This document shows, one piece after another, positions 20,217 through 21,768 of a stretch of DNA of 64,000 nucleotides. The stretch lies in the NCBI GenBank assembly GCA_963924565.1, contig OZ004608.1, forward strand, positions 7,564,001-7,628,000, written 5' to 3'. Position numbers and translations under genes: made by a program. Numbering within the stretch: the first letter of the stretch is position 1; every line of letters starts with the position of its first letter. A model generated the notes under the pieces. That model was given only the letters and a program-made list of their open reading frames with translations, searched no databases and had not been told where the DNA came from. This DNA is from Ascidiella aspersa (taxonomy: Eukaryota).

Positions 20217-20222
20217 TTTATT
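20217..20222 (-). terminator. Polyadenylation signal (AATAAA) of the prepropeptide gene
   Basis: AATAAA on minus strand ~790 nt after the stop, at the end of a U-rich 3' UTR-like stretch. Confidence 0.5.
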
Positions 20223-21013
20223 CCAGAAAAGTTCAGAAAAACAATAAAAATCGCGTTTTCACGTGGAACATGACGAGATATAAAAAACGAAAACAAATGA
20301 CAAGAAACTCAGCGCGAAACACAGTTGAACAACAAAAGAAAAAATAGCGGAAAATACAGAAAAGCTCAATGGACAGTAAACGGAGCAAGATTGGCAGCAA
20401 GTTCCAAAACGTCCTGAAATAGACTTGAAGGTAAGAACAAGAAAGACAGCTACGACCCCGGATGACCAAAGTTCGCTTGAATTCAGGTTAACTCGCAGCG
20501 TTGCCAAAACAGCTTCGAACAAACTCTGCCCGAAAGGTCTGCAGATGTGAATCACGCCGTGCTTTGCTCGAGACGGCAAATGGCAACAAGCTGCTCCAAC
20601 AGTGGCATCTTTGTGCCAACGCCAGGAAGGGCGCGATCATTTTCGCGGCCCTATCTCAAGCCGCGATCGTCCGCTCGACTGCTCTCTTGTGCGTTTTGCG
20701 GCGGCGCTCCGACCCCGAAACAGCAAATAGTCTGTGTTGCGATTCTTTGCACAGCCGCGCCCCAAAAAACGAGGCCGAAAGATCTGCCACTAGTGCGTTG
20801 CGGGAGATGGTACCAGTGTTGACGCCAAACAAGATCGGCCTGCAACCGGACTCTGACGCACGGTGGAAAAGATTGAGGCACAGTTTTCAACGCAATCAAA
20901 ATAAATAACACTCCTATACATGAGCGGGCTTCTCCTCCGAAACTCTCCACTTGACAATCATCTCTTCCCAATTTTTTTTCACCTTTAAGGCGTTACGTGA
21001 CTTTAAGAGGAAT

Positions 21014-21654
21014 TTACCAGCACCTTGCACTGCATCTTGCGCAGGAGGCACGTGACTTTCTTCTCTTCAGCCAAACTCCGGACCTCCTCCGGCGCGAGAG
21101 CTCCTTCTCTGAGGAGGATGTGGCGAACTCCTCCCAAGAGGACACGCTCCTCTTGGTGAGCACTGACGCGTGACAGCGATAGGCGAGCACGTAGCACTTG
21201 GCGCGCAGACGGTAGTGACACTTGCGTTTGATTATGAAGCCAGAGAAACGTTTGAACCTTTAGAAAAAAGAAAAATTGTTTAAAATGCTGATAGAACGCT
21301 TTAATACATATATCAAAGGGACGATTTCTGCAAAATCAAAATAGAAAACGTTAACGTCAAATTGAGTTGAAGATTCCGCTATATTTTGCTTGAGATTTGC
21401 AAACTTTAAATTGGCATTTAATTCAAGATACAGATGGGTTAAAATATAATATATTTCATTTAGAATTTGGTTGAATTTATCTCTAAAAATGTTTCGATAT
21501 AATGCAGTTAACAAAATTATTTAATTTACCTTTTAAGCAGTCCTCCGTTTTTGTCTTTTTCGCGTTTAGCTTCGGACGCTTCGCAGCAGATCGCCAAGCA
21601 ACAAGCTGCCAGAAAGGCGATGGCCAAAAGTCGGTTGCATCTTTGTGTCTGCAT
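21014..21654 (-). CDS. Two-exon gene for a 122-aa secreted cationic Cys-containing prepropeptide of unknown family
   Basis: CDS exons 21654-21530 and 21257-21014, joined by a 272-nt GT-AG intron (AG|GTAAAT ... ttttctaaAG|G, phase 2) into one frame: MQTQRCNRLLAIAFLAACCLAICCEASEAKREKDKNGGLLKRFKRFSGFIIKRKCHYRLRAKCYVLAYRCHASVLTKRSVSSWEEFATSSSEKELSRRRRSGVWLKRRKSRASCARCSARCW*. Hydrophobic signal-like N-terminus, RFKR/KR/RRRR processing sites, GC3-rich codons in exon 2, upstream TATA and downstream AATAAA. Confidence 0.75.
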
Positions 21655-21729
21655 CTCTTTTGTAAGGTCTGCTACTTCGAACGATATATACTCTCAAGGT
21701 AAATCCTGTGTCTTTAGCCGATGCTTCTG

Positions 21730-21768
21730 TGATTTGATGCTACACTCAGCTCTCCGCAGCCTTATATA
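21730..21768 (-). promoter_or_regulatory. TATA box and probable TSS of the prepropeptide gene
   Basis: TATATAAG on minus strand at 21768-21761, Inr-like CA/TCA about 30 nt downstream (~21738-21735), GC-rich proximal region to ~22010. Confidence 0.65.

What the first reader, a model, noticed from the sequence alone, without database searches (positions are those of the whole stretch)
20217..21768. Unassigned two-exon gene encoding a secreted two-peptide precursor (candidate new signalling or antimicrobial peptide system)
Seen in sequence: TATA, 5' UTR, ATG, clean GT-AG intron, stop, ~0.8-kb 3' UTR and AATAAA, giving a 122-aa protein absent from the ORF track. After a signal-like peptide and short propiece, convertase-type sites (RFKR, KR, RRRR) would release peptide 1 FSGFIIKRKCHYRLRAKCYVLAYRCHASVLT, an acidic spacer SVSSWEEFATSSSEKELS, and peptide 2 SGVWLKRRKSRASCARCSARCW. 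Both peptides start SG-hydrophobic x3-KR, lack acidic residues and carry 3 Cys. Established: furin cleaves R-x-[K/R]-R; signal + cationic peptide + acidic propiece is typical of antimicrobial peptide precursors; chain-spacer-chain is typical of two-chain hormones. Inference: odd Cys counts suggest an interchain-disulfide heterodimer. The Cys spacing (C-x7-C-x6-C; C-x2-C-x3-C) fits no family I recognise.
Basis: partly seen in the sequence, partly recalled or inferred. Interest (0 to 1): 0.85.

Follow-up and report, generated by a model that had tools for sequence, protein, structure and literature searches.

The report
Ascidian two-chain six-cysteine secreted peptide gene
The window holds a real two-exon gene for a small, very basic secreted pro-peptide. 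It belongs to an unnamed gene family found across sea squirts. The family's conserved cleavage sites and cysteines suggest a disulfide-linked two-chain peptide of unknown function.

Summary
TATA box, ATG at 21654, phase-2 GT-AG intron (21529-21258), TAA at 21016-21014 and the only downstream AATAAA (20222-20217) are all in place and give 122 codons.

It is not a chance ORF.
- The same genome has seven more loci with the same build.
- Exhaustive HMMER finds relatives only in tunicates (Ciona, Phallusia, Clavelina, Styela). All are filed as "uncharacterized".

Family hallmarks are a signal peptide and a basic helix with C-x7-C-x6-C-H. Then come a near-invariant K-R-S, a variable acidic spacer and a polybasic run. 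The protein ends in C-x2-C-x3-C-W.

Recent paralogues show purifying selection (pN/pS 0.08-0.30) while their introns no longer align. AlphaFold gives two helices joined by a disordered spacer.

There is no match to Pfam, PDB sequences or solved folds. Insulin, endothelin, DUF4543 and turgencin membership all fail.

Best reading: a precursor cut by convertases into a disulfide-linked two-chain cationic peptide. I lean towards host defence, with a signalling ligand close behind. Processing, disulfide pairing and function are inferred.

RNA support for this locus is thin: two fragments in the 3' UTR and no junction read.

The scan has flagged a paralogue before (s1-788696).

The parts
21761..21768 (-). 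TATA box (TATATAAG), about 105 nt upstream of the ATG
   Evidence: A TATA box is visible about 70-110 nt upstream of the ATG in paralogues L002-L005 and in the relative L020. In L006/L007 the stretch printed shows none.
21655..21735 (-). Putative 5' UTR. The start is inferred as about 30 nt downstream of the TATA box and was not mapped.
   Evidence: Inference. No RNA reads cover it.
21577..21654 (-). Signal peptide, residues 1-26. Predicted cut after C-E-A.
   Evidence: The hydrophobic core reaches a Kyte-Doolittle 11-mer mean of 2.87. Signal-like N-termini are seen in all paralogues and homologues. No SignalP was available.
21530..21576 (-). Short charged propiece at the end of exon 1. The last two bases start the Arg codon of RFKR.
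21258..21529 (-). Intron 1, 272 nt, GT-AG, phase 2
   Evidence: The same phase and position are seen in L002-L005, L020 and the Ciona gene L021.
21248..21257 (-). R-F-K-R furin-type site (R-x-K-R) spanning the splice junction
   Evidence: The Phallusia homologue also has RFKR. Others have EKR or EKRR.
21155..21247 (-). Putative chain 1, 31 aa, net charge +7, with C-x7-C-x6-C-H
   Evidence: The core has 44% mean pairwise identity in the family. AlphaFold gives a helix at pLDDT about 77.
21149..21154 (-). K-R dibasic site, followed by Ser
   Evidence: K, R and S are invariant in alignments A1 and A2. L015 has K-R-R-S.
21095..21148 (-). Acidic spacer ('connecting peptide'), 18 aa, charge -3
   Evidence: It is the least conserved part, at 25% identity and with variable length. 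It is disordered in both models.
21083..21094 (-). R-R-R-R polybasic site
   Evidence: Every family member has a polybasic run before chain 2.
21017..21082 (-). Putative chain 2, 22 aa, charge +7, ending S-C-x2-C-x3-C-W. It contains a further K-R-R-K, so the mature chain may be about 13 aa.
   Evidence: The C-x2-C-x3-C-W end is seen in all members. W is the last residue in most and is followed by 1-2 residues in five of this genome's loci.
21014..21016 (-). Stop codon TAA directly after Trp
20200..21013 (-). Putative 3' UTR of about 0.8 kb, with the only AATAAA at 20222-20217
   Evidence: The stretch 20480-21013 is single copy in the genome. Two RNA fragments lie at 20724-20975 with the first mate on +.

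Best explanation
The locus is a functional member of an unnamed, ascidian-wide family of small secreted pro-peptides.

Proposed mechanism:
1. The 122-aa product enters the secretory pathway through a cleavable signal peptide.
2. Its six family-defining cysteines are oxidised.
3. Furin or prohormone-convertase enzymes cut at R-F-K-R, at the near-invariant K-R before Ser, and in the polybasic run.
4. A carboxypeptidase trims the basic tails.
5. The variable acidic spacer is discarded like a C-peptide.

The product would be a strongly cationic two-chain peptide held together by disulfides. It consists of a helix of about 30 aa with C-x7-C-x6-C-H and a C-terminal piece of 13-22 aa ending C-x2-C-x3-C-W.

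Shown: the gene structure, the family, the conservation pattern and purifying selection.

Inferred: secretion, cleavage, disulfide pairing and activity.

For function I commit to an extracellular effector of host defence (antimicrobial or similar) as the single most likely role, at about 40%. A signalling ligand is next, at about 30%.
For: Gene model and its conservation:
- The gene model is intact.
- Seven further loci in the same genome share a signal-peptide exon, a phase-2 intron, chain 1 and chain 2. A TATA box is visible upstream of five of the eight loci.
- Four of them have two exons and cluster on the same chromosome, 220-310 kb away. Three have three exons, with an extra phase-1 intron right after KRSIS.
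- The Ciona gene has the same two introns.

Relatives elsewhere:
- HMMER over 1.84 billion proteins finds only tunicate relatives: Ciona intestinalis, C. savignyi, Phallusia, Clavelina and Styela.
- The closest relative, contig L020, keeps the whole architecture although only 53 nt of DNA still align.

Conservation and selection:
- K-R-S and two of the three chain-1 Cys columns are invariant in both alignments. The first Cys shifts in the L004-L007 subgroup. Chain cores are 44-48% identical against 25% for the spacer.
- pN/pS is 0.08-0.30 among paralogues whose introns and flanks no longer align.
- Two SNPs in exon 2 are synonymous.

Structure:
- AlphaFold gives helices over chain 1 and chain 2 (pLDDT 77-88) and a disordered spacer.

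For a defence role:
- Net charge is +7 on each chain.
- Tandem near-identical copies suggest dosage.
- Turgencins are a precedent: ascidian cationic 3+3-Cys antimicrobial peptides with the same second-half spacing (PMC7024374).
Against: - No splice-junction read and no read on the CDS. Only two RNA fragments lie in the 3' UTR, with 6% of one run sampled.
- No peptide data exist.
- Hydrophobic moment is low (0.08-0.22), unlike classical amphipathic antimicrobial peptides.
- Paralogues show purifying rather than diversifying selection.
- One-to-one relatives are kept between this genome and Ciona: L015 against P0010, 44% identity and 83% positives. This fits a conserved ligand as well as or better than an immune effector.
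- Invariant K-R-S could be structural rather than a cleavage site.
- Disulfide pairing could not be read from the models.
Confidence: 0.5

Rival explanations
1. The biogenesis is the same, but the two-chain peptide is a signalling ligand. It would be a tunicate hormone, neuropeptide-like factor or growth factor acting on a receptor, built like insulin/relaxin prohormones (chain, C-peptide, chain).
For: - The layout is prohormone-like, with a near-invariant dibasic site and a variable spacer.
- Non-Cys residues are conserved in the chain cores, and there is an orthologue-like pair with Ciona.
- Selection is purifying.
- RNA level is low in the one library sampled.
- The Trp end is conserved and is the last residue in most members.
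Against: - Eight loci, including near-identical tandem copies, are unusual for a hormone, though insulin-like families do expand.
- The basic charge is extreme, including long Arg/Lys runs.
- Ciona CNS peptide imaging by mass spectrometry lists 23 neuropeptides, and its text mentions neither cysteine nor disulfide (PMC12441681). That method may simply miss a large disulfide-bonded two-chain peptide.
- No receptor candidate was examined.
Confidence: 0.3
2. The protein is secreted but not cut between the chains. It would act as a single-chain, disulfide-stapled, very basic small protein, for example binding sulfated glycans of the tunic or egg coat, or nucleic acids outside the cell.
For: - Basic runs are much longer than a convertase needs. 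The C. savignyi member carries +25 between KRS and the C-terminus.
- No peptide evidence for cleavage exists.
- In AlphaFold the two helices sit in one chain.
Against: - K-R-S is conserved as strictly as the two invariant chain-1 cysteines, while the residues that follow are free to vary.
- The spacer varies in length from about 15 to 40 residues and is disordered. That is typical of an excised connecting peptide.
Confidence: 0.12
3. The family is real, but this copy is silent or decaying. It would be a recently duplicated gene that is no longer expressed.
For: - Only two RNA fragments, none on the CDS and no junction read.
- One non-synonymous SNP (K35T) lies in the propiece.
- L006/L007 show that copies with a damaged exon 1 exist in this genome.
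Against: - The frame, splice sites, TATA box, poly(A) signal, all six Cys and all basic sites are intact.
- Both exon-2 SNPs seen in other individuals are synonymous.
- The 3' UTR is single copy, so the RNA fragments come from this locus. The direction of their first mates fits the minus strand.
- A divergent relative keeps the same subtype.
Confidence: 0.06

Closest known systems
Uncharacterized ascidian proteins: Ciona intestinalis LOC100181000 (XP_002129225), Phallusia mammillata CAB3263071, Clavelina lepadiformis XP_076808003 and XP_076808244, Styela clava XP_077972931, Ciona savignyi H2ZPD3
   Same: They share every hallmark: signal peptide, C-x7-C-x6-C-[H/N], K-R-S, variable spacer, polybasic run and C-x2-C-x3-C-W at the C-terminus. 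The phase-2 intron before chain 1 was checked in Ciona.
   Different: - Identity to the window's exon 2 is only 26-33%; the unnamed relative L020 reaches 42% over 76 aligned residues.
- Ciona and three loci here carry an extra phase-1 intron that the window gene lacks.
- None has a name, a Pfam family or a described function.
- The C. savignyi entry is mis-named ribosomal protein L34.
Turgencins A and B, antimicrobial peptides of the ascidian Synoicum turgens (PMC7024374)
   Same: They are ascidian, cationic and have six Cys arranged 3+3. The second half has the identical C-x2-C-x3-C spacing. Their reported ladder pairing (C1-C6, C2-C5, C3-C4) is what a two-helix staple would need.
   Different: - They are single chains of 35-36 aa with a short loop and no excised spacer.
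- The first half is C-x3-C-x4-C, not C-x7-C-x6-C.
- The C-terminus is amidated and does not end in Trp.
- The family HMM scores them below zero.
Two-chain antimicrobial peptides of marine deuterostomes: sea-urchin centrocins and ascidian halocidin (my own knowledge, not checked here)
   Same: A cationic heavy chain and light chain are joined by disulfide. For centrocins, both chains come from one precursor with a signal, a propiece and an interchain spacer.
   Different: They have one cysteine per chain and no known sequence likeness. No sequences were at hand to test.
Insulin/relaxin superfamily prohormones
   Same: They work alike in outline: signal, chain, excised connecting peptide flanked by basic sites, chain, six cysteines and multigene families.
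   Different: The insulin framework (B chain C-x11-C, A chain CC-x3-C-x8-C) is absent. There is no Pfam or PDB-sequence match.
Endothelins and sarafotoxins
   Same: They are convertase-released helical peptides with a C-x7-C...C-H motif and a functionally important C-terminal Trp (my own knowledge).
   Different: Endothelins have four Cys (C-x-C-x7-C-x3-C) in one chain. The Pfam endothelin model hits none of the family loci.

Membership tests
Unnamed ascidian family (LOC100181000-like) | N-terminal signal peptide on its own exon, followed by a phase-2 intron | tested here: met
Unnamed ascidian family (LOC100181000-like) | Chain 1 motif C-x7(or x2)-C-x6-C-[H/N]-x3-[VIL]-x-K-R-S | tested here: met
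   Profile E is 1.2e-28 for the window locus.
Unnamed ascidian family (LOC100181000-like) | Polybasic run, then [ST]-C-x2-C-x3-C-W at or within two residues of the C-terminus | tested here: met
Convertase-processed two-chain peptide (a functional class) | Actual cleavage at the basic sites and interchain disulfides | not testable with these tools
   Only site conservation is shown. Peptide mass spectrometry is needed.
Insulin/relaxin superfamily | Cys framework of B chain C-x11-C and A chain CC-x3-C-x8-C, and a match to the Pfam insulin model | tested here: not met
   The spacing is read directly from the sequence. There are no Pfam hits at E up to 10 and no PDB-sequence hits.
Turgencins | Single chain with C-x3-C-x4-C-x7/8-C-x2-C-x3-C and an amidated C-terminus | tested here: not met
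   Only the second half matches. There is no Gly amidation signal because the protein ends in CW-stop. HMM scores are -1.9 and -2.8 bits.
Endothelin (PF00322) | C-x-C-x7-C-x3-C-H...W in a single peptide, and a match to the Pfam model | tested here: not met
   The own-genome search with PF00322 hits none of the eight loci.
DUF4543 / C17orf67 (PF15076) | Match to the Pfam model | tested here: not met
   The language-model search puts it first for two members, but at only 0.82 and 0.78. PF15076 finds nothing in the genome or in 14 family sequences. Noggin, its vertebrate neighbour, lies 2.2 Mb from L015, which is not convincing.

The most novel reading that the evidence does not exclude
The family is a tunicate-wide two-chain peptide hormone or growth-factor system with a disulfide framework unlike any known one. 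It would act through a still unidentified receptor. It might be the invertebrate-chordate counterpart of an unrecognised vertebrate secreted peptide; the weak C17orf67/DUF4543 lead is the only pointer.
Probability: 0.25. Interest if true: 0.8.

Novelty: new variant of a known kind. Interest (0 to 1): 0.6.

Why it matters
Tunicates are the closest living relatives of vertebrates, and their peptide repertoire is used to trace the origin of chordate endocrine and immune effectors.

This is a conserved, multi-copy secreted family. It has a cysteine framework with no match in Pfam, in PDB sequences or in solved folds.
- If it is a ligand, it adds an unknown signalling system to a model chordate (Ciona has members).
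- If it is a defence peptide, it offers a new disulfide-stapled two-chain scaffold.

It also shows that short spliced genes of this kind escape ORF-based annotation. At least one published Ciona antimicrobial screen discarded all Cys-containing candidates (PMC7387483).

Tried and rejected
Searches that found nothing:
- Word-based homologue search with exon 2 found nothing. With the family alignment it returned only four members already known.
- Pfam on 14 family sequences gave no meaningful hit.
- A PDB-sequence profile search gave none. Foldseek against the PDB gave none. VIA-align wide gave no Z of 2 or more.
- Rfam on 19500-22500 gave nothing.
- Literature searches by gene and protein identifiers and by C-terminal motifs gave no papers. 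Keyword searches gave only reviews, the turgencin paper and two Ciona peptide papers that I opened.

Families tested and rejected: insulin, endothelin, DUF4543/C17orf67 and turgencin.

Weak or artefactual leads:
- Noggin synteny as a test of the C17orf67 lead: same chromosome as L015 but 2.2 Mb away. That is about a 6% chance event by my own rough estimate, so it is not convincing.
- P0005, a 704-aa HMMER hit, is a translated tandem repeat and not a relative.
- L016, L018 and L019 from the own-genome search are chance hits; L017 (E 2, four in-frame stops) was not examined.
- Hydrophobic-moment analysis does not support a classical amphipathic antimicrobial helix.

RNA reads:
- One RNA run sampled at 6% gave two fragments in the 3' UTR and no junction. 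The reads tools were then at their caps.
- The low-depth contigs of run X4 over 20489-21019 cannot be assigned to RNA or DNA, so I do not use them as evidence.

Not done:
- Complex prediction was not used, because chain 2 is shorter than the 30-residue minimum.
- The joined 122-aa protein was never searched or folded. All searches and folds were exon by exon, by reference.
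Full report
**1. What is in the sequence**

On the minus strand I read the following:
- a TATA box (TATATAAG) at 21768-21761;
- the first ATG at 21654;
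- a 125-nt coding exon ending AAG|GTAAAT;
- a 272-nt intron (21529-21258) with a long pyrimidine tract and an AG acceptor;
- a 244-nt second exon ending TGG TAA (stop at 21016-21014).

The two exons give 369 nt, or 122 codons. Unspliced, the frame stops one codon after the donor. The only AATAAA or ATTAAA after the stop is at 20222-20217, 791 nt downstream.

The N-terminus has a basic start, a hydrophobic core (Kyte-Doolittle 11-mer mean up to 2.87) and C-E-A before the likely cut. Exon 2 carries RFKR (first R split by the intron), a 31-aa piece with C-x7-C-x6-C-H, then KR. An 18-aa acidic piece, RRRR and a 22-aa piece ending C-x2-C-x3-C-W follow. Each cysteine-bearing piece has net charge +7, and the spacer has -3.

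**2. The gene belongs to a family in this genome**

The window is C2:7564001-7628000 of a 308.6-Mb, 75-contig assembly. Searching the assembly with exon 2, and then with a profile of the hits, gave seven more loci.
- Four are on the same chromosome, 220-310 kb away: L004, L005 and the duplicated pair L006/L007.
- Two are on C3: L002 and L003.
- One is on C7: L015.

All eight loci have an upstream signal-peptide exon. L001-L005 and L015 have an AG acceptor followed by one base that completes a split codon. L001-L005 also have a TATA box about 70-110 nt before the ATG and a phase-2 GT donor.

L002, L003 and L015 seemed at first to lack chain 2. In fact each has a consensus phase-1 donor (AAG|GT) right after KRSIS, and a third exon further down that ends C-x2-C-x3-C-W plus zero or one residue.

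L006/L007 have an altered end of exon 1 with no phase-2 donor. They may be damaged or may use another first exon.

**3. The family outside this genome**

A profile of the exon-2 peptides was scored by HMMER against 1.84 billion representative proteins. Ten proteins reached E of 0.001 or better, the best at 8.4e-10. One (P0005) is a translated tandem repeat.

The named proteins among the rest are all tunicate:
- Phallusia mammillata CAB3263071;
- Clavelina lepadiformis XP_076808244 and XP_076808003;
- Styela clava XP_077972931;
- Ciona savignyi H2ZPD3 (mis-named L34);
- Ciona intestinalis XP_002129225 (LOC100181000).

All are called "uncharacterized". Three further hits come from unnamed Logan or metagenome contigs. 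The window's genome is therefore an ascidian. It is not one of the named species, since the best identities to Phallusia and Styela are only 31-41%.

The closest relative is a 1.9-kb genomic contig from run DRR090687 (L020). It has the same TATA box, signal exon, phase-2 intron and exon 2 ending CW-stop. Only 53 nt of its DNA still align to the window, while the protein is 42% identical.

The Ciona gene (L021) has the phase-2 intron and the phase-1 intron at the same places as L002, L003 and L015. L015 resembles Ciona LOC100181000 (44% identity, 83% positives, shared YCNPR and FHV-C...RFCW). This suggests subfamilies older than the split of these ascidians. That is an inference, as no tree was built.

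**4. Constraint**

- In both alignments two of the three chain-1 cysteine columns and K-R-S are invariant. The first cysteine lies five residues closer in the L004-L007 subgroup.
- Mean pairwise identity is 44% in the chain-1 core and 48% in the chain-2 core. It is 25% in the spacer and in the stretch before chain 1.
- Spacer length varies from about 15 to 40 residues.
- Among L004, L005 and L006, exon 2 has pN/pS of 0.30, 0.11 and 0.08. Synonymous divergence reaches 0.34, and introns and 3' flanks align no better than chance.
- In two other individuals of the species (DNA runs X1, X2), the two exon-2 SNPs are synonymous. The one exon-1 SNP changes K35 to T in the propiece. The 5' leader and 3' UTR carry many more changes.

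**5. Fold**

AlphaFold2 with the 16-row family alignment gave two models.
- For the window's exon 2: helices over residues 15-36 and 72-78 (block pLDDT 76-78) and a disordered stretch at 33-65.
- For the Ciona protein: a signal helix, three short helices over chain 1 (up to pLDDT 88), a disordered spacer and a helix over chain 2 (pLDDT 83).

The first spacing varies (x7 in most members, x2 in L004-L007). Because of that, one interchain plus two intrachain bridges is as plausible as three interchain bridges.

**6. Expression**

This is the weak point. One RNA run of the species (X7, about 6% read) gave two fragments at 20724-20975 in the proposed 3' UTR. Their first mates lie on +, which in the usual stranded libraries means a minus-strand RNA. 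There were no reads on the CDS and no junction.

That stretch is single copy in the genome, so the fragments come from this locus. Low-depth contigs of run X4 cover 20489-21019, but I cannot tell whether they are RNA. The reads tools were then at their caps.

Indirect support for expression of the family comes from the spliced gene models in RefSeq for Ciona, Styela and Clavelina. The Phallusia entry also counts, which to my knowledge derives from a transcript collection (not checked here).

**7. Comparison with known families**

- Pfam: nothing.
- PDB sequences by profile: nothing.
- Foldseek and VIA-align against solved structures: nothing.
- The insulin framework is absent.
- The endothelin model hits none of the loci.
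- The protein-language-model atlas puts DUF4543/C17orf67 first for two members, but at 0.82 and 0.78, below the level where such hits mean much. PF15076 finds nothing. Noggin, the vertebrate neighbour of C17orf67 (PMC7483449), lies 2.2 Mb from L015. I keep this only as a lead.
- The nearest described molecules are turgencins A and B from the ascidian Synoicum turgens. They are cationic, have six Cys arranged 3+3, share the C-x2-C-x3-C second half and have ladder pairing (PMC7024374). They are single chains, differ in the first half, are amidated, and score below zero with the family HMM.
- A Ciona in-silico antimicrobial screen removed all Cys-containing candidates (PMC7387483).
- The Ciona CNS peptide imaging study lists 23 neuropeptides, and its text mentions neither cysteine nor disulfide (PMC12441681).
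- No paper in the library holds the gene identifiers or the C-terminal motifs.

**8. Mechanism**

Best reading (confidence 0.5): a secreted precursor is oxidised and cut by furin or PC-type convertases at RFKR, at KR before Ser and in the polybasic run. The spacer is lost, and a disulfide-linked two-chain cationic peptide remains.

For function I lean to host defence (about 40%). The reasons are the charge, the tandem near-identical copies, the TATA promoters and the ascidian precedent. A signalling ligand is close behind (about 30%), because of the purifying selection, the conserved non-Cys residues, the Ciona counterpart and the low RNA level. An uncut single-chain basic protein (about 12%) and a silent copy (about 6%) remain possible.

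**9. Novelty and limits**

The family exists in databases only as unnamed models. Its architecture, its spread across ascidians and its cysteine framework appear undescribed. It is a new variant of a known kind, the convertase-processed cysteine-rich secreted peptides.

The joined 122-aa protein was not searched or folded. Exons were joined only inside one script, to place SNPs in codons. The scan's first stage has independently flagged a paralogue (s1-788696). It matches L002 by its 848-letter span and its three exons (against my).

Noticed in passing
G000:C1:5488187-5488240 (-), locus L028 (outside the window): The Pfam endothelin model gives one hit above its curated cut-off (23.1 bits, E 0.026 per genome). 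It is an open frame with KKKR followed by a peptide containing the exact endothelin heptad CVYFCHL. It has only three Cys and no IIW tail. It may be chance, but endothelins are held to be vertebrate-only.
   Followed up: partly
window 22056-22112: A short high-copy repeat. Word depth jumps to 618 against about 105 in DNA run X1. The four RNA reads here carry unlike sequence on both sides, so they come from other copies.
   Followed up: no
window 20094-20120: A homopolymer junction (C12 then A15 on the minus strand) lies about 100 nt downstream of the poly(A) signal. Reads are cut here (skipped repeat 20088-20129).
   Followed up: no
L006 / L007 (G000:C2:7272666-7275851 and 7280457-7283642): A tandem duplicate pair of family members with identical exon 2. 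In exon 1 the usual end and phase-2 donor are replaced by an A-rich insertion encoding K-K-C-Q-K-C repeats. These may be pseudogenes, or a different first exon may be in use.
   Followed up: partly
L032 (Clavelina lepadiformis OX392442.1:10088678-10109476): The Clavelina family member lies inside, and antisense to, a large ITIH-like VWA/VIT gene. The scan's note on L002 also calls that paralogue 'antisense'.
   Followed up: no
P0008 (UniRef100_H2ZPD3, Ciona savignyi): This family member is named '60S ribosomal protein L34' in UniRef. That is evidently a mis-annotation driven by its Arg/Lys-rich stretch.
   Followed up: no
G000:C7:17881124-17881741 (-): A single-exon Noggin gene (212 bits) lies on the same chromosome as family member L015, 2.2 Mb away.
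   Followed up: partly
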